This document shows, in pieces, positions 1 to 11,268 of a stretch of DNA of 11,268 nucleotides (its first letter is position 1; every line of letters starts with the position of its first letter). Source of the stretch: Octopus sinensis (taxonomy: Eukaryota); NCBI RefSeq assembly GCF_006345805.1, contig NW_021826952.1, positions 1 through 11,268 of the forward strand, read 5' to 3'. Position numbers and translations under genes: made by a program. The notes under the pieces were generated by a model. The model saw only the letters and a list, made by a program, of their open reading frames with translations, did no database searches and was not told the origin of the DNA.

Positions 1-278
1 AAAACACCTAAAAGCTCCACGAGGCTCGGCAGGCGGGATGGTGGTGATCCTGCTGTACTCTTTCACCACAACTTTCTCTCACTCTTACTTCCTGTTTCTG
101 TTGTACCTGTATTTCAAAGGGCCGGCTGTCACTCTCTGTGTCACGCTGAATATCCCCGAGAACTACATTAAGGTTACACGTGTCTGTGGAGTGTGCCCAC
201 TTACACGTTAATTTCACGAGCAGGCTGTTCCGTTGATTGGATCAACCGGAACCCTCGTCGTCGTAACCGACGGAGTGC
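1..278 (+). mobile_element. SINE body and 3' tail (head cut off by the window edge)
   Basis: 1-95 (AAACACCTAAAAGCTCCACGAGGCTC...CACAACTTTCTCTCACTCTTACTTCCTG) aligns with the body of the complete tRNA-headed SINE at 2619-2916 (minus). The tail ...GTCGTCGTAACCGACGGAGTGC resembles an abundant octopus SINE (recall). Confidence 0.75.
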
Positions 279-375
279 TTCTAGAGAATCATCACAGATT
301 ATTTGCTGACCAAGTCACCGTTGATTATCGGAGTCGACATAGTGTGGTAGTCTGGGTTTCAAGTAGGTTCTAGAG

Positions 376-594
376 CAGTGCTTTTCAACCTTTTTGCTGG
401 AGCGGAACCCCAAGGAAACATTCCACTGGCTTGAGGAACCCCTGTGCAATAATTTAATAGTCTTATGCACACATATCTGCACAGGAGAATTAAAAATTAC
501 TCCTGATTTTAGCAGTTTTGTAACTTCTTGCGGAACCCCTGGACTGTACTGGAGGAACCCTAAGGTTCCGTGGAACCCTGGTTGAAAACCACTG
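376..594. mobile_element. hAT (Charlie-like) MITE, 219 bp
   Basis: 15-bp TIRs CAGTGCTTTTCAACC (376-390) and GGTTGAAAACCACTG (580-594), 1 mismatch. Perfect 8-bp TSD TTCTAGAG (368-375, 595-602). Five subterminal GGAACCC motifs. Empty paralogous site at ~1148. Confidence 0.95.
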
Positions 595-1519
595 TTCTAG
601 AGACACGCTTTAACAAAAGCTAAGAGGTGCCTCGCCCCCAGTGATTTTCCAGCACAGTGGACACCAAGCCAGAATTTCTAAGGTCCCATAATTTAAACAA
701 AAATGAGTTAAGAGAAATAACTTTTAGTGGCCAGTAATATGTATTTACTTACTTGTATGTACTTACAGTAGCATTTACCCAGGAGGGGGTTTCAACCAGC
801 TTTGACCAAATTCACCATGTCCCTCAGAAACGCTGACCATATCCGATGGTTGGCCACAGTCAAGGCTGTAATGGATGTGACAAATGTCACACTGTGAGAG
901 CAAACACATCAGATAGTCCAGAAGCCATAGCTGTAATCATCATTCGCTGTTGAGGTTTAGAGTTCACATTCAGAGTTTTGGTAACAACACAGGTTTACAT
1001 GTGGCCCCCGGTCACACGCATACACATTTTGGGATGGTGTGATGTGTAGCAGTTCATCTTATCATTAATTGCGAATCGTCGTAATTAATTCACTGACCAG
1101 GTCAGCATTGATTATTGGAGCAGATACAGCTTGGGTTTCAAGCAGGTTCTAGAGACATACTTTAACAACAGCTAAGAGGTGCCTCACAGCACATTGGACA
1201 CCAAATCCAGAATCTCTGAGGTCCCATAATTTAAATAAAAATGAGTTTAGAGAAATAACTTTTAGTGGCCAGTAATATGTATTTACTTACTTGTATGTAC
1301 TTACAGTAGCATTTACCCAGGAGGGGTTTCAGCCAGCTCCGACCAAATTCACAATGTCCCTCAGAAACGCTGACCATATCCAATGGCTGGCCACAGTCAA
1401 GGCTGTAATGGACTTGACAAATGCTACACTGCGAGAGCAAGAGTGTTGGATAGCACAGACGCCATAGCTGTAGTTGTCATTCACTGTTGAAGCCTAGAAG
1501 TCATGTTTGGAGTTTCAGC

Positions 1520-1785
1520 AGGAGTATATAGCGGTCTGGCTGTTATACTCCCAATCGCTAGATCATGGTTCAAATCCCAGACAAGATGGCACATCGTGTT
1601 TTTGAGCCAAACACTTCATTTCACATTGCTTTTGCTCCCCCTTTCGATCAAGGAGTGTTGACCTGCTCACACAGCCAGCAGGATGGCCTGGTCTGATGGC
1701 TAAAACAATGCAAAGCGCATTGTGACCAGTGATGTGTAACAGCATCTGATAGTCTGGTCTGATCAGTCACAGGATCGATGTGACA
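1520..1785 (+). mobile_element. Degenerate tRNA-derived SINE inserted in array copy 2
   Basis: B box GGTTCAAATCCC at 1567-1578, followed by TTGAGCCAAACACTTCATTTCACATTGC, which is shared with the SINE at 6040-6229. It interrupts the tandem-unit alignment, which resumes at ~1787. Confidence 0.7.
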
Positions 1786-1975
1786 TACAAGTTCACGTGT
1801 GGTCCTTAATCATGTGCATAGTGTGGTCGGTAGCAGCTCATCTTGCCCTTACTTATTTCCTACACTCAAATGCTATTGGCGGTGTTGCCGTCCCTGACCA
1901 AGTCACCATTGATTATCGGAGCGGATGTAGCTTGGATTTGAAGCAGGTTTTGGAGACACACTTTAGCAAAATCAC

Positions 1976-2290
1976 AGATCATTTTTTAAAATGTTCATAA
2001 CAGACGACAAATATCGGGTTTGTGTTTATGGTCCTAAAACCAGGTCTTTGTCTTTGCAGCAGAAGGCCCTAAAAGATTTCGAGAAATCCAAGAAAATGTG
2101 ACATAGCAGCTATTTGCAATCACCAAAAAAGGAGTTCCAGGAATGTTTCCATCAATGGAAAGAAGAGGATAAAATGTGTGACCTTGGAAGGGGACTAATT
2201 CGAAGGAGATTAAATGCCATATCAGTATGGGAAGCAGTTTTCCTTTTTATAGAACCAGTTTCGATACTTTTTGATCAAACCTTCTATGTA
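1976..2290 (+). mobile_element. Internally deleted mariner remnant with right TIR
   Basis: Decayed translation FKMFITDDKYRVCVYGPKT (cf. ITGDEtWVYgYdPETK) is joined directly to RF.EIQENVT*QLFAI.KKEFQECFHQWK..DKCVTLEGD*FEGD* (mariner C-terminus). It ends in a TIR-like ...GATACTTTTTGATCAAACCTTCTATGTA. Confidence 0.85.
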
Positions 2291-2385
2291 TGTGTGTGAG
2301 AGAGAGACAGAAACAAACAGACAGAAAAAGAGAGAGAGTGTGCATGGTAAGAGACACAGCTTGAATGTTATTATGGCCAAAAATA

Positions 2386-2579
2386 TTTCCAAAAGTCGAA
2401 TCCCACTTGAAAGAAACAAGATTCCAAGACATCGTGGAAATCCAAGAAAATATAACAAGGCAGATAGCTACTTGCTATCCAAAAAAATGGAGTTCCGGGA
2501 ACGTTTCCATCAATGGAAACAGCACTGGATAAAGTGATGTGGCCTGAGAAACGGACGACTTCAAAAGGAGATTTAATGC
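2386..2579 (+). mobile_element. Mariner transposase C-terminal pseudogene fragment
   Basis: With frameshifts reads FPKVESHLKETRFQDIVEIQENITRQ..LAI..MEFRERFHQWKQHWIK..., matching the mariner C-terminal consensus FPKLK..LKG.RF...EI. Paralogous to 2072-2220. Confidence 0.85.
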
Positions 2580-2580
2580 T

Positions 2581-3090
2581 TTGCCATGTTCTCTTGGATT
2601 TCTTACATGTCTTGAAGTTCCTTCTCGAGCCATCCCTGGCTCATAAGGGCCGGTTTCCTGGTTTCCTTGGCATATAGGTTCCCCACCTGGACGGGATGCT
2701 GGTCCATCGCAGGTGGGCTGCAAGGTGCAGGAAGAAAGAGTGAGAGAAAAGTTGTGGCGAAAGAGTCAGCAGAAGTTTTGCCATTAACTTCTGCCTGAGC
2801 CACGTGGAGCTTAGGTGTTTCCCTCATAAACACACACATCGCCCGATCTGAGATTCGAACCCGCAATCCTTCAACTTTGAGTCCACTGTTCTAACCACTA
2901 GGCCATGTGCCTCCACCATGTCTTAAAGTCTTTCGGGGTCTTCTACTGCAAAGACTAAGCCATGGTTTCGGGATCATAGCCATAGACCCAATATTCGTCA
3001 CTTGTTATGAACATTTTCAAAAAGTTCTCGGTTTTCCTCGACACAAGCCAAGGAGATCTTGCGCAACTGAAACCCAAACTTCTTTCTGAG
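2581..3090 (-). mobile_element. Internally deleted mariner remnant interrupted by a SINE
   Basis: Minus strand reads QKEVWVSVAQDLL...NFLKMFITSDEYWVYGYDPETMA*SLQ*KTP (first catalytic D region), then jumps to the RFQD/EIQEN segment, which is split by the SINE at 2619-2916. Confidence 0.85.
2619..2916 (-). mobile_element. Full-length tRNA-derived SINE (~298 bp) with 13-bp TSD
   Basis: A box TGGCCTAGTGG (2895-2905) and B box GGTTCGAATC (2852-2861) on the minus strand. Flanking direct repeats CATGTCTTGAAGT (2606-2618) and CATGTCTTAAAGT (2917-2929), 1 mismatch. Confidence 0.9.
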
Positions 3091-3099
3091 ATGACCACA

Positions 3100-3282
3100 C
3101 TCTACTTACTTGATTTCCTATACTCACATGGTATTGGCGGCGTTGCTGATTCCTGACCAAGCCACCGTTGACTATCGGAGCAGATGTAGCTTGGATTTGA
3201 AACAGGTCCTAGATACACACTAAAACAAAGGCTAAAGGGTACCTTACTCCCAGCTGGCACCAACCCAGAATTTCTGAGGGCC
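3100..3282. repeat. Fourth, partial copy of the ~550-bp tandem unit
   Basis: CTGACCAAGCCACCGTTGACTATCGGAGCAGATGTAGCTTGGATTTGAAACAGGT (from 3153) matches 1894-1950. It continues to CCAGAATTTCTGAGGGCC, as in copies 1 and 2. Confidence 0.85.
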
Positions 3283-3691
3283 TGTGCTATTGCGGGATAG
3301 CCATTGAACAACATAGACAAATAAAGGTATATTAAATAATATACAACATAAATTCTCGATTTGTATCTCTCGGAAATAATAAAAATAGAGACAGCACGAA
3401 GGCGACATGCTGGTTTGATCCCGAAGCAAGGGGGTCACAAAAGTCCTTGTGATAGGAAATAGATATTGTTCGGTCTTCGCGGATCTTTGGGATCTTCACC
3501 TGCGAGATGAAGATGATGAACGAGGTTTAGCTAGGTATCGGTCAGGTAAAGTGAGCTGTGGTCCTTTTCTGAAAATCAATGACGGGTGAAGAGAAAAAAA
3601 AAACAACATAAAATGCTTTGAACTCGTGGTTTCTTGGCTGTCTGAATGAGAGAAAAAAAGAAAAATAACAGGAAAAAAAAAGAATTATTAA

Positions 3692-3804
3692 CCTTTAGCA
3701 TGCTGTAGGTACATCATGTCGCCATATAAGTATTTTCTTCTCTCAATGTGATACAGGAGAGAAAATTCATATGGGTGTCATGATGAGCCTAAGCATGCTA
3801 AAGG
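3692..3804. mobile_element. piggyBac-type (TTAA) MITE, 113 bp
   Basis: TTAA on both sides (3688-3691, 3805-3808). Perfect 13-bp TIRs CCTTTAGCATGCT / AGCATGCTAAAGG. Imperfect complementarity continues ~35 bp inward. Confidence 0.85.
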
Positions 3805-4064
3805 TTAATGGAGATATACTGCCAAAAAGAACATGTTCCTTTCTTTTCTGAGGTGTGATGTTATTTCTTTGAAAACAACATCTAGAGAAACTTGTTCAAG
3901 CTAACAAGCAGTTAAGTTTTTAACTATTCACGTTTCTCATTTCTCTGTCCATGTTCATTAATTTCTGTAAAGCTTTGCAATCTTCACCTGGGAGATGAAA
4001 ACGATGATGATAGAGGTTTTAACGAGGTGTCAGTCTGTTGGGCTGACCTGTGGTCCTTTTCATA

Positions 4065-4108
4065 ACCCATGTCAGAATAAGGAAAACGGACTTTAAAATG
4101 ATGACGAC
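4065..4108 (+). mobile_element. Short 3'-end remnant of an RTE-type SINE/LINE
   Basis: ACCCATGTCAGAATAAGGAAAACGGACTTTAAAATGATGACGAC resembles the ...ACCCATGCCAGCATGGAAAACGGACGTTAAACGATGATGAT retroposon tail (recall) and the tail at ~5960-6025. Confidence 0.45.
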
Positions 4109-4417
4109 AGATCGATAAAAATAAGAACATGATGCTCTGAATTCTTGCCTTCTTTGCTGTCAAAGACAAGATTTCTCAAGCTTAGGACAAATATGGTTGG
4201 TCTGAATAAGAGAGAAAAAAAAAAAAAAAAAAATAACACAAAAAAAATTTATAAACGAAGAAGTAAAAGAAACGCCCGGGAGGAAGAAAAAAAAGAATTT
4301 TTTTTTCTTTTTTTTTTCGTGGCGTGACCTTACTTCTTCGAACACAAAATCTGAACAAAGGTGCTCGAGCGAACAAGCAGTTTAACGAAGATTTTTTAAA
4401 GAGATTAGAAAAATTAC

Positions 4418-4559
4418 CCCCGCTTCCGACTCCTGTACTCATCCATGTCCATAAAGATCTTCACGGCCTCCGGAAAGAGACACTGCAGCAGCTCCCGCTT
4501 TGCATCCTGTGGTAAGTTTCCGACAACGATAGTCTTGTCCTTAGCCTCTGAAATGCTCG
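4418..4559 (-). CDS. Internal exon candidate encoding the N-terminal half of an RRM (nucleolin-like)
   Basis: Acceptor TTTTTAATGTTATATTTCATACAG| and donor GG|GTAATT enclose 142 nt (phase 1 to phase 2) with no stop: SISEAKDKTIVVGNLPQDAKRELLQCLFPEAVKIFMDMDEYRSRKRG. It contains the RNP2 motif IVVGNL and the start of RNP1 (RG). Compare nucleolin RRM2 DARTLLAKNLP...LKEVFEDAAEI...KSKG. Confidence 0.7.
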
Positions 4560-5120
4560 CTGTATGAAATATAACATTAAAAATCACATATAGTCTCTGC
4601 CGTAACAGGCTTTTCAGCGGGGTTATTTTTAAAGGATAGGGGTCGGTCAGTTGACATCGGCGATCGATGGCTAATTAGGTATTTTTTTCCCCCGTCAGCA
4701 ACTGTCCGTCCAGCCAGCCAGCATCCATTATTGAATGACCGATGGCCAACGGTACCAGCTGATGTATGTTTCTAGGTGGACACGTCACTAAAAACTAACA
4801 CATAGGGCGTTCAGTTAGAATCTCAGGGGGCCCCTGGCGGATGGTGCCTACACTGATGTTTGGTCATTTCCAGGTTCAGAATCAATCCAGCATGACATTT
4901 CAGGGTTCATAAGGATGGAATTTAATCCAGGTTCCCTTATGCTCGAGTGACTGAGACTACAGCTCCTCCTGCCCTACTTTGTGACCATCACCAGGCTGTC
5001 CGATGATGGGCTTTCTGGGTGAACCTTCAACGTCACCCTTCATGCTATTTGTGTTCAAGAATAATAAAGCTGTACTCTAGCAAATGTATTCAATGATCCT
5101 TCAATTTCAATGTTTTTATT

Positions 5121-5192
5121 ATATTTTATAAAAACAAACACAAATATGCATATATATATATATATATATAAAATATATATCTACAAATGTGC

Positions 5193-5265
<73 letters not shown>

Positions 5266-5338
5266 GGTACATTTGTAGATATATATTTTATGTATATATA
5301 TATATATATGCATATTTGTGTTTGTTTTTATAAAATAT
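5121..5338. repeat. Near-perfect inverted repeat: 70-bp arms around an (AT)n-rich spacer
   Basis: 5121-5190 equals the reverse complement of 5269-5338 at 69/70 positions, including the non-microsatellite words AAAAACAAACACAAATATGC and CTACAAATGT. Confidence 0.9.
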
Positions 5339-5697
5339 TCATATATATATATATATATAGATATACACGCACATGTATATATACACACACACATATATAT
5401 ATATACACACATGCACACAAATGTGTGTATATATATATATATGCATATATATACACACACACAAGTGTATATATATGCACATATATATATGTATGCATAT
5501 ATATATACATACACACATATTTGTACGTACACACATATATATATATTTATACATACACACATTTATAAATGTACGAATATATATATATACATATATATAT
5601 ATATAATATATATACACACACACACACACACAAACACACATATATATATGAGCAAATATGCATATAGATATATAAATATATAAATGCACAAATATGC

Positions 5698-5740
<43 letters not shown>

Positions 5741-5775
5741 CACATATTTATCTGGAAGTGTGTATGTATATTTGT
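5146..5775. repeat. Compound (TA)n/(CA)n microsatellite tract
   Basis: Continuous TA with CA/TG interruptions. Confidence 0.95.
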
Positions 5776-5779
5776 ATAT

Positions 5780-6025
5780 ATCTTTGTTGTGAAATCATGT
5801 GTTGATCGTAACCAAGCAGTACCAAATCACAGGCGGTGTTGTTTGGTTCCGGTCTTCCACGGAAGGGAACGTAACGTTGCTTGTGTCCAAGCAAGGGGCT
5901 GACAGCAGGAAGCGAAGTGATGGAATCTGGTCACCGAAAATCAGCCTCACCCATATACAAACAGACCCGCGGCAGCAAGGGACAGAGGACGTTATACAAC
6001 GACAAGGGTGTTGATGATGATGATG
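5780..6025 (+). mobile_element. Diverged 3' half of an RTE-tailed SINE with a (GAT)n tail
   Basis: Follows a microsatellite and ends ...GGACGTTATACAACG...GATGATGATGATGA. Resembles the 3' part of a microsatellite-containing octopus SINE (recall). Confidence 0.5.
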
Positions 6026-6039
6026 AGGAGACTGATTCA

Positions 6040-6229
6040 GGGCATCATATCGACATTACCTGTACAGGTGCACAATGTGCCATATGTCGGGTGACGAAAT
6101 GATCGCAGAGCAATGTGAAATGAAGTGCTTTGCTCAAGAATGCAACACAATGCCCAGTCTAGGGATCGAACCCACAATCTCACATCTTGAATGCAACACC
6201 CTAACCACTAAGCCATGTGGTTTTGCACC
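6040..6229 (-). mobile_element. tRNA-derived SINE
   Basis: Minus-strand A box TGGCTTAGTGG (6205-6215) and B box GGTTCGATCCC (6162-6172). The body TTGAGCAAAGCACTTCATTTCACATTGCT is shared with 1520-1785. Confidence 0.8.
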
Positions 6230-6277
6230 TATATATATATATATATATATACTGTGTGTAATATAAATGTGTATATG

Positions 6278-6308
<31 letters not shown>

Positions 6309-6720
6309 GTGTGTGTGATATATATATATGTATATATTATATATGTATATATTGTGTATATATATAATATATGTATTATATGTGTATATATATATATGTA
6401 TATATATGTGTATATATTATATATGTATATGTGTATATATATATATGTATATATGTGTATATATATATATATGTATATATATGTGTATATATATATATAT
6501 ATGGTATAAGATATGTGTATATATATATATGTATATATGTATAATGTATATATATGTATATATATATATATATGTATAATATATGTATATATATGTATAT
6601 ATATATATGTATATTATATATATATATATATATATGTAATAATATATATATTATATATATATATATATTATATATCATATATATATATATATTATATATA
6701 TGTATATATATGTATAATAT

Positions 6721-6771
<51 letters not shown>

Positions 6772-7815
6772 CTATCATCTATATATATGTCTAATATACA
6801 TATATATGTATATATATATCATATATGTATATATACATATATATGTATACTATATATGTATCATATACATACATATATGTATATAATATATTATATATAC
6901 ATATATATATATACACATATATATACATATATGTATATATACATATTATTATACTACATATACATATATATATATATGTACATATTATATATACATATAT
7001 GCTATATACATATACATATATATGTACATATATATATACATATATGTATATATACATAACATATATATACATATACATATATATTACATATATATATACA
7101 TATATGTATATATACATATACCATATATATATATATGTACATATATATATATACATATACATATATATATGTACATATATATATACATATATATATGTAC
7201 ATATATATATCACATATATAATTATATACATATATATATACACATATATATATACACACATATTATACACCCATATATATACACATATATATATACACAT
7301 AAATACACAATACACACCCACACAATATATATATACATATATATATACACATATATATATATAATTACTATATATATATATCCACGTTATATATATAACA
7401 CATACACATATATACATATACACATATATATATGCACATAGATATATACACATATATACACATATATATATACACATATATTATACCATATATATATACA
7501 TATATATATCCACATATATACCATATATATATACATATATATATACACATATATATATAATACATATATATATAACATATATACACAGACATATATATAT
7601 ACACATATAGACACATATATCACACTATATATTATTACATATATATAACACATATATCACATATATACACATAACCTATATTATATACACATATATACAC
7701 ATATATACACATATATATATATACATATATATATACACATATATACACATACCTATATATATAACACATATATACACATACATATATATATCCACATATA
7801 TACACATATATACAC

Positions 7816-7850
<35 letters not shown>

Positions 7851-7875
7851 TATATATAACACACACACATATATA
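6230..7875. repeat. ~1.6-kb degenerate TA-rich simple repeat
   Basis: TA tract with mostly G interruptions in the first third and mostly C interruptions afterwards. Confidence 0.95.
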
Positions 7876-7917
7876 GAACAGCATCCATCAGTTTGTTTTT
7901 TTTTCCGACCCTCCAAG

Positions 7918-7987
7918 ACTCGTGCGGAACAAAGCTATCTTCAAAACGAGAGACAAACGCTGCTGCACTTCACAACTGCAGCAACAG
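7918..7987 (+). other. Possible small exon (unconfirmed)
   Basis: T-rich acceptor ...TTTTTTTTCCGACCCTCCAAG| and strong donor CAG|GTATGT. 70 nt, open in all three frames. No recognised homology. Confidence 0.25.
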
Positions 7988-8257
7988 GTATGTTGCACCG
8001 ATATATAAAGTCAGATCGGAATCTATAACTTCTGCTGCAAGGATAAAAAAAAAAAACAGATGGTGCCAGTCTGACGACGATGGCCATCCAGCTGAGATAG
8101 AAGCACAGAGCGGACAACGTGGATAATAAATCATGCTGCAAGTCGTTGGATGTCGATATGATAATTTGTAAAGAGATGGTCAAGGCACTCACAGGAGGTC
8201 AGGTACTGGTGCTTGGGAATGAGCCAGTCTTGACCAGTGTACCTTTGTGCGTGGGTA

Positions 8258-8421
8258 GGTGCAGGGGTAGCTGTGTGGGTAAGAAGCTTGCTGTTTGAAC
8301 ATGTAGCTTTTGGTTCAGTCCCACCGTGTTGCACATGTGGCAAGTCACTTCCACTGAGGTCCCAGGCCGACCAAAGCCTTCCTAGTAGATCTGGTGAACA
8401 GAAACTCTAAGAAGACCAACG
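8258..8421 (+). mobile_element. 5' part of a tRNA-related SINE running into a microsatellite
   Basis: GGTGCAGGGGTAGCTGTGTGGGTAAGAAGCTTGC...GGTTCAGTCCC...CCGACCAAAGCCTT...GAAACTCTAAGAAGACCAACGTATAT has A/B-box-like motifs and resembles an abundant octopus SINE head (recall). Confidence 0.7.
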
Positions 8422-8562
8422 TATATACATACATGTATGTATACATACACATACATATATACAGGTGTGTGTATATATATATGTATATATCTGTGTATAT
8501 ATATACACATATATATATATATATGTATATATCTGTGTATATATATACACATATATATATAC

Positions 8563-8593
<31 letters not shown>

Positions 8594-8765
8594 ACATATA
8601 TATAATATATATACATATATATATATATATATATCCATATATATATATATAATATATATATACAATATATATATATATCCAACACGGACATAAGTGTGTA
8701 TGCATATATGTAAATATATTATATACATACATGAGAAAAAATGTATGTATATATTATATACATAC
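8422..8765. repeat. Compound TA microsatellite with a 42-bp higher-order duplication
   Basis: TGTATATATCTGTGTATATATATACACAT at 8482 and 8524. Confidence 0.9.
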
Positions 8766-8929
8766 ATTTTTTTCTCTAGTTGCAGCTCAGAGCTGCAGCC
8801 ATGCTGATGCCCTGCTGTTTCGCCAAGCTAACATGGCAGTCCAGAACAATAGGACAGAAGCTGCTGTTGATTAGCTCCAAGATGCCATCGACTCTAGGCA
8901 GCTACGTGACACACAAACCTGTGTCCATT

Positions 8930-9380
8930 ATAACTAGTTTTTCTTCCCTTTCAATCACGGTTCCAGAGTTGCCAAATCCACTCAAGACATTTCTGCTGTG
9001 TATGGAGAAAGTTCTATTACTAAAAGAACTGCAAAAAAAATGGCTTTCACGCTTCACAGGGGGTGAAATTTGACCTCAAAAACTCTCCGCAACCTGGATG
9101 ACTTGTTCAGGTCTATGTTGGTCAATTGAACGAGACCATCTCTGAGGATCCACGCCAATCCACATAGAAGTAGGCCCAGTAGATACAATGCTTTCATGAT
9201 ACCGTCACATACCACCTTCAATCAATGAGTAAGGAACAAGATCCCGGTGCTTCAGTGCCAAACACACTCAACTAAAGAGACAAAATTCAGTGTTCCTCTA
9301 TCGCTGCCAGTTTGGTCAAAAAATGCCAGGAAACTCAAGATTTTCTTCAGTGCATCATCAGCAATCATCAAAAATGGTTC
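8930..9380 (+). mobile_element. Mariner transposase N-terminal pseudogene (different family from 1976-3090)
   Basis: With stops and one frameshift: FPFNHGSRVAKSTQDISAVYGESSITKRTA/KWLSRF../FDLKNSPQPG...EDPRQST...HDTVTYHLQSMSKEQDPGASVPNTL...[12 protein letters not shown]. This matches the mariner HTH region, the WVPHEL motif and IVTGDEKW. Confidence 0.85.
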
Positions 9381-9574
9381 CTTCTTCAGTTTTCATTCAC
9401 CCTTCATCTGTGCATTCCATTTTCCCAATCAGCATTTTTTCTTTTTTATATCTTGATTTCTCATGTACCAGTGTTTTGGTTTTCAAATAGAACTGAACGT
9501 GTGCTCAGAAAGACGATTCCATTTCACAAAGGCAGGGAATTATTTGTAGCTCTTATTTTAATAAAGTGTACACT

Positions 9575-9770
9575 GATATATATATTTATATATATATATA
9601 TATATATAATATATATATATATACATACACATATATGTATATATATACACACACATATATGTATACATACCAGTATATATATACATATATATACGTATAC
9701 ATATATATATATATACTTATATATATACATATACGTATACATATACATATATGTATATATATATATACGT

Positions 9771-9810
<40 letters not shown>

Positions 9811-9977
9811 GTATACATATATATATATATGTATGTATATATATATATATATATACGTATATATACATATATATATGTATATATATACGTATACATACAT
9901 ATATATATGTATATATATATATGTATGTGTGTATATATATATGTATATATATATACTGGTATGTATACATATATGTG
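9575..9977. repeat. TA microsatellite with six TACGTA units and inverted end markers
   Basis: TACGTA at ~9692, 9732, 9766, 9808, 9854 and 9886. CATACCAGTA (~9666) is mirrored by TACTGGTATG (~9954). Confidence 0.9.
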
Positions 9978-10331
9978 CAATTGTGTACGTCGTTCCCTCT
10001 CTCTTACTCCTCCTCCTCCTCCTCGACCCTCTCATCACTGACACGTGATCAGAGGGAAGCCATCTTTCCAACTGCTGTCTTCACTGAGACAAGACCACTT
10101 ATCCTGTCTCTCTCATAAGCTGTCTCCTTAAGCGTTCAGAATAATTTTTCCATCATCTTGGCTTAACAGACCTCATCGTTTGTTTTTACTATGTTATTCT
10201 CATTGTTCTGTCCTTTACTGTTTTTATTTGTATTGGTTTTACTCTCTTCTTTTGTTCTTACTGTTCTGTTCTTGTTAGCCACTTTTACCCCTCCGCAAAA
10301 AATGCCAAATTTTATTTAATTTCCTTTGCAG

Positions 10332-10428
10332 GAAGGACTGTTTCAACGAAGTCGCGTCTTGTCCTTGCCTTCGAAACGCGGAGTAGATGAAACAGGGACA
10401 ACTGAAGAAGGGGAATATTCCTTGTGGT
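10332..10428 (+). other. Possible exon (unconfirmed)
   Basis: Strong acceptor TTTTATTTAATTTCCTTTGCAG| after a long T-rich tract, and donor T|GTATGT. One frame is open (EGLFQRSRVLSLPSKRGVDETGTTEEGEYSLW). CpG-rich compared with its flanks. No recognised homology. Confidence 0.35.
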
Positions 10429-10539
10429 GTATGTCTTGTACTCTGTTTTTTCGTTGTTTGAAAAAAAAAGTTCGTTTCTATGTTTTTGTTTTTATGTTTT
10501 CGTTTCACATTGTGTTCAACGTTTTTTGGGATGTCCTAT

Positions 10540-10584
10540 GTATATATGCATATATTTATATGTTATTTAAATTATTACATACAT

Positions 10585-10623
<39 letters not shown>

Positions 10624-10870
10624 TCCATATATATACACATACATACGTAAGCATATATATACACATACAAACGTATATATATATATCCATATATATATAT
10701 ACACATTCATACGTATATATACATTCATATATATATATTACTCTACCACTGGTATTTGAGTACTCTTTTTTCCACCTTGTTTCACATTTATGTGTTTACT
10801 CCGGTATATATATATATATGCATACACACACACATACACTCCCTCTCTAACATATACAGACACAAGTATA
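10540..10870. repeat. Interrupted TA/CA microsatellite
   Basis: Visible dinucleotide tracts at 10540-10740 and 10805-10870. Confidence 0.9.
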
Positions 10871-10899
10871 TACTTGTTTGCCCATCAGTTTTATAAATA

Positions 10900-11268
10900 C
10901 CCAATGGTATCACACGGGAGAATGCAAATCATGGTGTGTGTGGGCGTGGCTAATCCACCTGACGATTACCCGGGTGGCTCAGCTGCATATCAGGCACCGG
11001 TCGCCTCCCAGGAATGAACACAAGAAGTTGGCTCGGGACCGGCACAATTTGCCTTTCCTTTGTACTTCTGCAATGCTGCTGTTTGGAATTTGCATCACCT
11101 GTGATGGCACAATTTCTTGTGCTTGCATTTCCCAGGCACCAAAGTTGATCTGAAAGCCCTTCAGTGAGGCTTTGAATTCATCCTTGAAGCATGTTTTCTT
11201 GTCTCCCTAGTGCATGCTTCGCTCCCAACAGGTCCATCTAAAAGATTCTCTCGGGTAGTCAAATGTCA
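10900..11268 (-). mobile_element. RTE-clade LINE 3' end (decayed ORF C-terminus)
   Basis: Minus strand: LPERIF...LGRQ/KTCFKDEFKASLKGFQINFGAWEMQAQE...IAEVQRKGKLCRSRA...CLIC*...WISHAHTH. This matches the RTE C-terminal pattern LP..L.YG..R..G.QKKRFKD.LK.SLK...WE..AQDR...C..C...GL.SH.R.H. Confidence 0.75.

What the first reader, a model, noticed from the sequence alone, without database searches (positions are those of the whole stretch)
4418..4559. Hidden exon encoding half of a nucleolin-like RRM, absent from the ORF track
Seen: clean AG and GT boundaries, an uninterrupted frame, balanced GC, and the peptide ..KDKTIVVGNLPQDAKRELLQCLFPEAVKIF...RKRG. The frame hits stops right after the donor. 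Established: RNP2 ([ILV]-[FY]-[ILV]-x-N-L) and RNP1 define RRMs; the F-x-(D/E)-A-x-x-I segment recalls nucleolin RRMs. The usual RNP2 aromatic is Val here, so RNA binding may be atypical. Inference: a real, possibly unannotated or lineage-specific RRM gene whose introns make up this window.
Basis: partly seen in the sequence, partly recalled or inferred. Interest (0 to 1): 0.7.

Follow-up and report, generated by a model that had tools for sequence, protein, structure and literature searches.

The report
Conserved cephalopod exon, divergent RRM half
The 142-base stretch is a real internal protein-coding exon on the minus strand, matched exon-for-exon by an annotated but uncharacterised gene of the octopod Argonauta hians; it encodes the first half of an unusual RNA-recognition-motif domain, which makes it an ordinary though poorly known gene piece, not a new kind of feature.

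Summary
On the minus strand, 4559..4418 is a 142-nt open frame. It has a T-rich tract and cag| acceptor, a GG|gtaattt donor, an in-frame stop inside the donor, and 52.8% GC against 34.8% for the window.

Pfam alone does not prove anything. RRM_1 scores E=0.11, and 2 of 10 control ORFs from the window give junk hits just as good.

The decisive evidence is cross-species. An exhaustive phmmer search of 1.84 billion proteins finds GAB1609074.1, a 1771-aa hypothetical protein of Argonauta hians, at E=1.9e-5 with 50% identity. In the Argonauta locus that stretch is a separate exon with the same intron phases and the same CGGGG|gtaattt donor. The next exon lies 4.5 kb downstream.

Synonymous sites are saturated (pS 0.78) and non-synonymous sites are not (pN 0.28). 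Similarity stops at the splice sites.

The full Argonauta domain aligns end to end with RRMs: Pfam RRM_1 at E=0.0027, 26 of 28 PDB profile hits, and hhalign probability 96% to bona fide RRM repeats. The RNP aromatic residues are missing.

It is not nucleolin. No other exon of the gene lies in the window. The rest is intron filled with AT microsatellites and interspersed repeats. Interest is modest.

The parts
4418..4559 (-). Internal coding exon, 142 nt, phase 1 in and phase 2 out. It encodes SISEAKDKTIVVGNLPQDAKRELLQCLFPEAVKIFMDMDEYRSRKRG: beta1 (RNP2-like IVVGNL), alpha1, beta2, the beta2-beta3 loop and the first two residues (R-G) of RNP1 of a divergent RRM.
   Evidence: Sequence and frame. 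Homology to Argonauta hians GAB1609074.1 residues 10-57. Same exon in the Argonauta locus L001 20624-20768. Coding-type divergence. GC 52.8%.
4560..4590 (-). 3' splice site of the upstream intron: T-rich tract plus cag (AG at 4561-4560).
   Evidence: Read directly. The Argonauta exon starts after ...tatatatacacag, one codon longer, in the same phase.
4411..4417 (-). 5' splice site of the downstream intron, gtaattt. The in-frame TAA (4416-4414) lies inside it.
   Evidence: Read directly. The exon end plus intron start, CGGGG|gtaattt, is identical in Argonauta.
1..4410 (-). Part of the downstream intron (the equivalent of Argonauta intron 2, which is 4.5 kb). It holds interspersed repeats and A/T runs. 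The exon carrying the rest of RNP1 and the second half of the RRM is not in it.
   Evidence: tblastn of P0004 finds no further exon. A regex scan finds no RNP1-like exon. Repeats. Argonauta intron length.
4591..11268 (-). Part of the upstream intron (the equivalent of Argonauta intron 1, about 10.6 kb). It is dominated by imperfect AT microsatellites. The first coding exon (start codon) was not found here.
   Evidence: There is no in-frame ATG upstream of the exon within its stop-free segment. tblastn gives no hit for P0004 residues 1-9. Tandem repeats. Argonauta exon 1 is at L001 10001-10025.

Best explanation
Window 4559..4418 (minus strand) is a functional internal coding exon of a large multi-exon cephalopod gene. 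That gene is the orthologue, or a close paralogue, of Argonauta hians Ahia01_001192800 (GAB1609074.1, 1771 aa). The exon corresponds to Argonauta's second coding exon. It encodes the N-terminal half (beta1-alpha1-beta2-loop, ending in the R-G that opens RNP1) of the protein's first domain, a divergent RRM. The second half (beta3-alpha2-beta4) sits on the next exon, more than 4.4 kb away and outside the window. Shown: the exon, its splice signals, its homology, its conserved boundaries and phases, and purifying selection on the peptide. Inferred from the Argonauta protein: the full protein has an RRM at the extreme N terminus, a second RRM-like domain, a short helical region, about 1300 residues of low-complexity S/T/G/R/D/E-rich sequence and an RG-rich C-terminal tail. 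This suggests a nuclear RNP-associated scaffold. The three aromatic residues that stack on RNA in canonical RRMs are replaced: RNP2 position 2 is Val here and Ala in Argonauta, and RNP1 positions 3 and 5 are Ser and Leu in Argonauta. The domain therefore most likely binds RNA non-canonically or acts as a protein-interaction pseudo-RRM. This last point is inference only.
For: Exhaustive phmmer of the 48-aa peptide against 1.84e9 representatives: P0004 at E=1.9e-5, 50% identity over query residues 3-48. P0004 is the A. hians hypothetical protein. BLASTP gives 24/48 identical and 36/48 positive with no gaps. tblastn of P0004 on the window gives a single hit, 4560..4417 minus, E=3.5e-10, co-terminal with the exon. 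In Argonauta locus L001, residues 10-57 form one exon (20626-20769) and residue 58 starts the next exon 4.5 kb downstream. Both species share the donor CGGGG|gtaattt and the same phases. Of the 24 identical residues, 13 use different codons; identity by codon position is 65/73/46%; pS=0.78 (saturated) against pN=0.28. The other two frames carry stops in both species. Flanking intron identity is about 25%, which is random level. RRM assignment: Pfam RRM_1 on P0004 residues 20-86, profile 1-69/70, E=0.0027. PDB phmmer of the exon peptide has nucleolin on top, E=0.0071, aligned at beta1/alpha1 of three of its RRMs. The profile of exon plus Argonauta domain gives 26 of 28 PDB hits as RRMs in register, best E=1.3e-3. 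hhalign against seven Euglena RRM repeats gives probability 95.9%, E=5.8e-9; that protein scores RRM_1 at 6e-27.
Against: No transcript evidence is available for this locus. Only one exon of the gene is visible, so an intact full-length gene is not shown. The Argonauta model is an automated GINGER prediction combining ab initio, RNA-seq and homology evidence, not a characterised gene. All RRM scores are below Pfam's gathering threshold (12.8 and 18.0 bits against 20.7). The single-sequence AlphaFold model of the Argonauta domain is low-confidence (pLDDT 52). No second homologue was retrieved. The source organism of the window is unidentified.
Confidence: 0.85

Rival explanations
1. It is a relic exon of a dead or dying gene copy, such as an unprocessed pseudogene or a degenerating duplicate. 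The exon still looks intact, but the gene as a whole is no longer functional.
For: Only one exon can be inspected. No other exon of the gene lies in 11.3 kb. Identity to the only known homologue is just 50%. The surroundings are saturated with repeats and microsatellites.
Against: The frame is open. Both splice sites are intact, and the donor is identical to Argonauta's. pN is far below the saturated pS, which shows long-term purifying selection along at least most of the divergence. Intron sizes in Argonauta (4.5 and 10.6 kb) explain why neighbouring exons fall outside the window.
Confidence: 0.08
2. It is an exon of the organism's true nucleolin orthologue.
For: Nucleolin is the best PDB hit for both the exon peptide and the Argonauta domain. 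The F-P-E-A-x-x-I segment aligns with nucleolin's F-E-D-A-x-E-I.
Against: E-values are marginal (7e-3 to 1e-3), and eIF3g, NCBP2 and hnRNP D score nearly the same. In the Argonauta homologue the RRM starts at residue ~17, with no acidic N-terminal domain. Only one domain scores as RRM_1 and the second has no PDB RRM hit. About 1500 residues of low-complexity sequence follow. The RNP1 and RNP2 aromatics that nucleolin RRMs keep are absent.
Confidence: 0.03
3. It is a chance open frame in intronic or junk DNA that happens to contain an RNP2-like hexamer.
For: The window has 120 ORFs of at least 40 aa. Pfam RRM_1 at E=0.11 is at noise level: 2 of 10 control segments do as well against unrelated families.
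Against: The Argonauta match has E=1.9e-5 against 1.84e9 proteins and E=3.5e-10 on the window. The exon boundaries coincide with an independently annotated exon. Divergence is of the coding type. Similarity ends at the splice sites.
Confidence: 0.02

Closest known systems
Argonauta hians hypothetical protein Ahia01_001192800 (GAB1609074.1), coding exon 2 (contig BAAFZT010000077.1; assembly described in PMC12682272)
   Same: 50% identical and 75% similar over the whole exon without gaps. The exon is delimited the same way: phase 1 acceptor, phase 2 donor, identical CGGGG|gtaattt. It sits in the same position in the domain (RNP2 through the R-G of RNP1). Both have long flanking introns.
   Different: The window exon is one codon shorter at its 5' end (142 against 145 nt). 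Synonymous sites are saturated, so the two are anciently diverged; orthologue versus paralogue is undecided. The RNP2 aromatic position is Val here and Ala in Argonauta. The Argonauta protein itself is uncharacterised.
Canonical RRM domains (Pfam PF00076), e.g. nucleolin RBD2-RBD4, eIF3g RRM, NCBP2 RRM
   Same: The beta1 hexamer I-V-V-G-N-L fits [ILV]-x-[ILV]-x-N-L. The alpha1 and beta2 spacing fits, and R-G opens RNP1. The Argonauta domain aligns over the full RRM length. The F-x-[DE]-A-x-x-I segment matches nucleolin RRM2 and RRM3.
   Different: It scores below Pfam's gathering threshold. The aromatic residues at RNP2 position 2 and at RNP1 positions 3 and 5 are missing (Val or Ala; Ser and Leu in Argonauta). 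The overall protein architecture is unlike nucleolin, eIF3g or NCBP2.
Euglena gracilis multi-RRM protein EG_transcript_1603 (P0003)
   Same: It shares the signature T-[IV]-V-[LV]-x-x-x-P ... L-F-P-x-A-x-x-I ... G-x-C-x-[IV]-x-F. hhalign probability is 95.9%.
   Different: It has seven or more tandem repeats in a protist protein, it passes RRM_1 strongly (6e-27), and there is no similarity outside the domain. The shared signature may be convergence within the RRM superfamily.

Membership tests
Orthologue/paralogue group of Argonauta hians Ahia01_001192800 | Significant sequence similarity to the protein | tested here: met
   phmmer E=1.9e-5 against 1.84e9 proteins. tblastn E=3.5e-10, 50% identity over 48 aa.
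Orthologue/paralogue group of Argonauta hians Ahia01_001192800 | Same exon boundaries and intron phases | tested here: met
   Argonauta residues 10-57 form one exon and the next exon starts at residue 58. Both exons are phase 1 in and phase 2 out, and the donor CGGGG|gtaattt is identical.
Orthologue/paralogue group of Argonauta hians Ahia01_001192800 | Remaining exons present and collinear (second RRM half, second RRM-like domain, long low-complexity region) | not testable with these tools
   No other exon lies in the window.
RRM (Pfam PF00076 RRM_1) | Profile score at or above Pfam's gathering cut-off (20.7 bits) | tested here: not met
   Window exon: 12.8 bits, E=0.11, profile positions 1-20 only. 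Full Argonauta domain: 18.0 bits, E=0.0027, profile 1-69/70. Both are sub-threshold but in register.
RRM (Pfam PF00076 RRM_1) | Homology to bona fide RRMs by profile or profile-profile comparison | tested here: met
   26 of 28 PDB hits at E<=1 are RRMs aligned from beta1 onward, best 1.3e-3. hhalign probability is 95.9%, E=5.8e-9, to Euglena repeats that pass RRM_1 at 6e-27.
RRM (Pfam PF00076 RRM_1) | RNP2 hexamer [ILV]-[FY]-[ILV]-x-N-L | tested here: not met
   I-V-V-G-N-L matches 5 of 6 positions, with the aromatic replaced by Val. Argonauta has I-A-V-S-N-L.
RRM (Pfam PF00076 RRM_1) | RNP1 octamer [RK]-G-[FY]-[GA]-[FY]-[ILV]-x-[FY] | tested here: inconclusive
   Only R-G lies in the window exon. 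Argonauta continues S-C-L-V-V-F, which lacks the aromatics at positions 3 and 5. The window's own next exon was not seen.
RRM (Pfam PF00076 RRM_1) | beta-alpha-beta-beta-alpha-beta fold | tested here: inconclusive
   The single-sequence AlphaFold2 model of Argonauta residues 1-97 has pLDDT 52. It shows helix 27-37 and strands 41-48, 57-63 and 68-73, but it is not reliable.
Nucleolin | Acidic N-terminal domain, then two to four tandem canonical RRMs, then a C-terminal GAR/RGG domain | tested here: not met
   In the Argonauta homologue the RRM starts at residue ~17 with no acidic N-terminal region. Only one domain scores as RRM_1, and the second has no RRM hit in the PDB. About 1500 low-complexity residues precede a short RG-rich tail.
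Nucleolin | Best and specific sequence similarity to nucleolin RRMs | tested here: inconclusive
   Nucleolin is the top PDB hit (E=7e-3, 4.8e-3 and 1.3e-3). eIF3g (1.9e-3) and NCBP2 (7.9e-3) are equivalent.

The most novel reading that the evidence does not exclude
The gene is a cephalopod-restricted, fast-evolving protein. Its N-terminal RRMs have lost all three RNA-stacking aromatic residues (a pseudo-RRM) and are fused to more than 1300 residues of disordered RG/DE-rich sequence. It would be a lineage-specific RNP or condensate scaffold. It could be of interest for cephalopod-specific RNA biology, and it may be missing from current annotations of the source species.
Probability: 0.15. Interest if true: 0.45.

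Novelty: new member of a known kind. Interest (0 to 1): 0.25.

Why it matters
It shows that a 47-codon exon, invisible to ORF-length filters and to Pfam thresholds, can be validated from a single cross-species comparison. It marks the window as intronic DNA of a large, uncharacterised cephalopod gene. If the source annotation lacks this exon or gene, it is a concrete fix to that annotation. Biologically it adds a second member to a so-far single-sequence family: a divergent RRM without RNP aromatics, followed by a giant low-complexity region. That protein may be worth an expression and RNA-binding test. Nothing here challenges current knowledge.

Tried and rejected
- Pfam on the exon peptide alone gave RRM_1 at E=0.11. 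I rejected it as evidence after 2 of 10 control ORF segments from the window gave unrelated hits at E=0.064 and 0.14.
- The search for homologous proteins (word index) gave nothing for the exon peptide. It also gave nothing for the first 228 aa of P0004, although the full-length query retrieves P0004 itself. The index therefore misses short queries, and these negatives are uninformative.
- The other hits of the exhaustive search (P0001, P0002, P0005) are highly repetitive proteins. Their scores sum many weak repeats, so I rejected them as homologues.
- I looked for the second half of the RRM in the window with a regex for RNP1-like hexamers, with tblastn at word size 2 and E<=100, and by inspecting the window's left end. 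None was found.
- I looked for the first coding exon upstream. None was found.
- Exact-product look-up of the 57-aa ORF found nothing on record.
- The metagenome scan with degenerate patterns gave 481 pattern matches, none confirmed.
- Single-sequence AlphaFold2 of the Argonauta domain gave pLDDT 52, unusable, so I made no fold search.
- PDB searches of Argonauta's second domain and helical region found nothing.
- Rfam and tRNA scans of the window found nothing.
- The mariner-like and LINE-tail-like peptides I recalled from memory were not confirmed by Pfam or PDB.
- I could not verify from the literature held here that nucleolin's RRM exons are split at the same position. Only the 14-exon count was found.

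Full report
**1. The observation**

The feature lies on the minus strand. The minus strand reads ...tatgtgatttttaatgttatatttcatacag|CGAGCATTTCAGAGGCTAAGGACAAGACTATCGTTGTCGGAAACTTACCACAGGAT...CGGAAGCGGGG|gtaatttttc.

- The exon is therefore 4559..4418, 142 nt. The AG is at 4561-4560 behind a T-rich tract and the GT is at 4417-4416.
- The frame is 2 nt + 46 codons + 2 nt. It gives (A)SISEAKDKTIVVGNLPQDAKRELLQCLFPEAVKIFMDMDEYRSRKRG.
- The TAA at 4416-4414 overlaps the donor.
- Exon GC is 52.8%. The 200-nt flanks have 45.5% and 29%, and the window as a whole has 34.8%.
- The mechanical ORF is 57 aa, under the 60-aa default. That explains its absence from an ORF track.

**2. Is it more than chance?**

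Intrinsic features do not settle this.

- The window has 120 ORFs of at least 40 aa.
- Pfam gives RRM_1 at only E=0.11, 12.8 bits, over profile positions 1-20.
- Ten control stop-free segments from the same window produced two unrelated Pfam hits at E=0.064 and 0.14. The Pfam hit is therefore at noise level.
- phmmer against PDB sequences is more suggestive. The top hit is nucleolin (E=0.0071). The query aligns to the beta1/alpha1 part of three nucleolin RRMs, and most other hits are RRMs (NONO, RBM11).

**3. Decisive evidence: a homologous exon in another cephalopod**

An exhaustive phmmer search of the 48-aa peptide against 1.84 billion representative proteins returned five hits.

- Three are repetitive proteins whose scores are sums of weak repeats. 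I discount them.
- One is a Euglena multi-RRM protein.
- One is P0004 (E=1.9e-5, 50% identity over query residues 3-48, protein residues 12-57). P0004 is GAB1609074.1, 'hypothetical protein Ahia01_001192800' of the octopod Argonauta hians. BLASTP gives 24/48 identities and 36/48 positives with no gaps.

I fetched the Argonauta locus (L001, contig BAAFZT010000077.1) and mapped the protein back onto it.

- Residues 10-57 are one exon (L001 20626-20769).
- Residue 58 begins the next exon 4.5 kb further on (25259).
- The first nine residues lie on a mini-exon about 10.6 kb upstream.

tblastn of P0004 on the window gives exactly one significant hit, 4560..4417 minus, E=3.5e-10, co-terminal with the candidate exon.

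- Both exons enter in phase 1 and leave in phase 2.
- The exon end and intron start are identical (CGGGG|gtaattt).
- The window exon is one codon shorter at its 5' end.

**4. Selection**

- Nucleotide identity is 61% within the exon. By codon position it is 65/73/46%.
- Of the 24 conserved residues, 13 are encoded by different codons.
- Nei-Gojobori proportions are pS=0.78 (saturated) and pN=0.28.
- The two other frames contain stops in both species.
- Beyond the splice sites, ungapped identity drops to about 25% and no local alignment is found.
- Conservation therefore acts on the peptide and is confined to the exon.

**5. What the exon encodes**

- The complete Argonauta domain (residues 20-86) aligns to Pfam RRM_1 over profile positions 1-69 of 70. 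The score is E=0.0027, 18 bits, just under the 20.7-bit gathering score.
- Its PDB hits are RRMs aligned over the whole domain, with nucleolin RBD2 on top, then eIF3g, SRSF2 and RBMX.
- A profile of the Argonauta domain plus the window exon (A1) hits 28 PDB sequences at E<=1. Of these, 26 are RRMs in register (nucleolin 1.3e-3, eIF3g 1.9e-3, NCBP2 7.9e-3).
- Profile-profile comparison with seven repeats of the Euglena protein gives probability 95.9%, E=5.8e-9. That protein passes RRM_1 at 6e-27.
- The window exon thus supplies beta1 (RNP2-like IVVGNL), alpha1 (DAKRELLQCLF), beta2 (VKIFMDM), the loop, and the R-G that opens RNP1.
- In Argonauta RNP1 continues S-C-L-V-V-F.
- The aromatic residues that canonical RRMs use to stack on RNA bases are all replaced. 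At RNP2 position 2 the window has Val and Argonauta has Ala. At RNP1 positions 3 and 5 Argonauta has Ser and Leu. The role of these positions is established knowledge of the family.
- This suggests atypical RNA binding or a protein-binding pseudo-RRM. That is inference.
- A single-sequence AlphaFold2 model was too poor to use (pLDDT 52).

**6. Gene context**

- No other exon of the gene is in the window. This fits the Argonauta intron sizes of 4.5 and 10.6 kb.
- The window offers only 4.4 kb downstream and 6.7 kb upstream of the exon.
- The remainder of the window is intron-like. It contains four long imperfect AT microsatellites, several interspersed repeat families and a local duplication, and A/T runs next to the exon.
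- Rfam and tRNA scans are empty.
- The Argonauta protein continues with four further regions:
  - a second RRM-like domain, with no database hit;
  - a helical region, also with no hit;
  - about 1300 residues of low-complexity sequence;
  - an RG-rich tail.
- The Argonauta model comes from the GINGER pipeline, which combines ab initio, RNA-seq and homology evidence, on the assembly published in PMC12682272.

**7. Comparison with known families**

- It works like, and is homologous to, RRM domains. It does not reach Pfam's threshold and lacks the RNP aromatics, so I file it as a divergent RRM.
- It is not nucleolin. The architecture of the homologue fails nucleolin's definition, and nucleolin's lead over eIF3g in the searches is negligible.
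- Its one secure family is the Argonauta hypothetical protein.

**8. Limits**

- I could not identify the source organism. The nearest relative is an octopod, and a few short repeats are shared with the Argonauta locus, so a cephalopod origin is likely.
- I could not check the source annotation or any transcripts.
- Lineage restriction is untested.
- A metagenome scan found nothing, and so did an exact-ORF look-up.

**9. Verdict**

This is a real, conserved internal coding exon encoding the first half of a divergent RRM. It is a new member of a known kind, of modest interest (0.25).

Noticed in passing
window 5150-5751, 6230-7858, 8422-8678, 9576-9955: There are four long imperfect AT/TA dinucleotide arrays (73-79% matches), together about 2.9 kb or a quarter of the window. 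The interrupting bases switch strand bias: GC skew is about +1.0 at 6300-6750 and about -0.9 at 7200-7800. The arrays therefore contain TG-type and CA-type variants in opposite orientation.
   Followed up: partly
window 306-347, 1093-1185, 1894-1986, 3153-3245; also 666-978 vs 1204-1515: An interspersed repeat family has four copies at 76-93% identity. Separately, a local duplication with about 537-nt spacing shows 82-95% identity. These look like SINE-like or other transposable-element debris in the intron. They were not classified.
   Followed up: no
window 1982-2087 and 2918-3023: A 106-nt inverted repeat is 77% complementary. Its translations (FITDDKYRVCVYGPKT and FITSDEYWVYGYDPET) recall, from memory, a mariner/Tc1 transposase motif. 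Pfam and PDB searches gave no hit, so this is unconfirmed.
   Followed up: partly
window 10982-11206 (minus): A stop-free segment reads GDKKTCFKDEFKASLKGFQINFGAWE... From memory it resembles the C-terminal tail of LINE ORF2 proteins. Pfam gave no hit.
   Followed up: partly
window 8271-8329 and 5980-6026; L001 27322-27379, 27632-27689, 23940-23987: Short stretches (48-61 nt, 76-79% identity) are shared with two or three places in the Argonauta locus, in orientations not collinear with the gene. This is probably a repeat family common to both genomes, consistent with a cephalopod origin for the window.
   Followed up: no
window 4215-4236 and 4283-4318: Long A runs and T runs lie 100-200 nt downstream of the exon's donor, within the intron. 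They may be tails of retroposed elements.
   Followed up: no
P0003 (Euglena gracilis EG_transcript_1603), residues ~51-973: This protist protein has at least seven tandem RRMs. They share the unusual signature L-F-P-x-A-x-x-I ... G-x-C-x-V-x-F with the cephalopod domain. Whether this reflects a real RRM subfamily or convergence is open.
   Followed up: partly
tool behaviour: The word-index protein search did not retrieve P0004 when queried with its own first 228 residues, but it did with the full-length protein. Negative results of that tool for short queries should not be read as absence.
   Followed up: yes
L001 44520-45635: The gene downstream of the Argonauta homologue encodes a multi-Myb/SANT-domain protein. 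It could serve as a synteny marker if the source genome becomes searchable.
   Followed up: no
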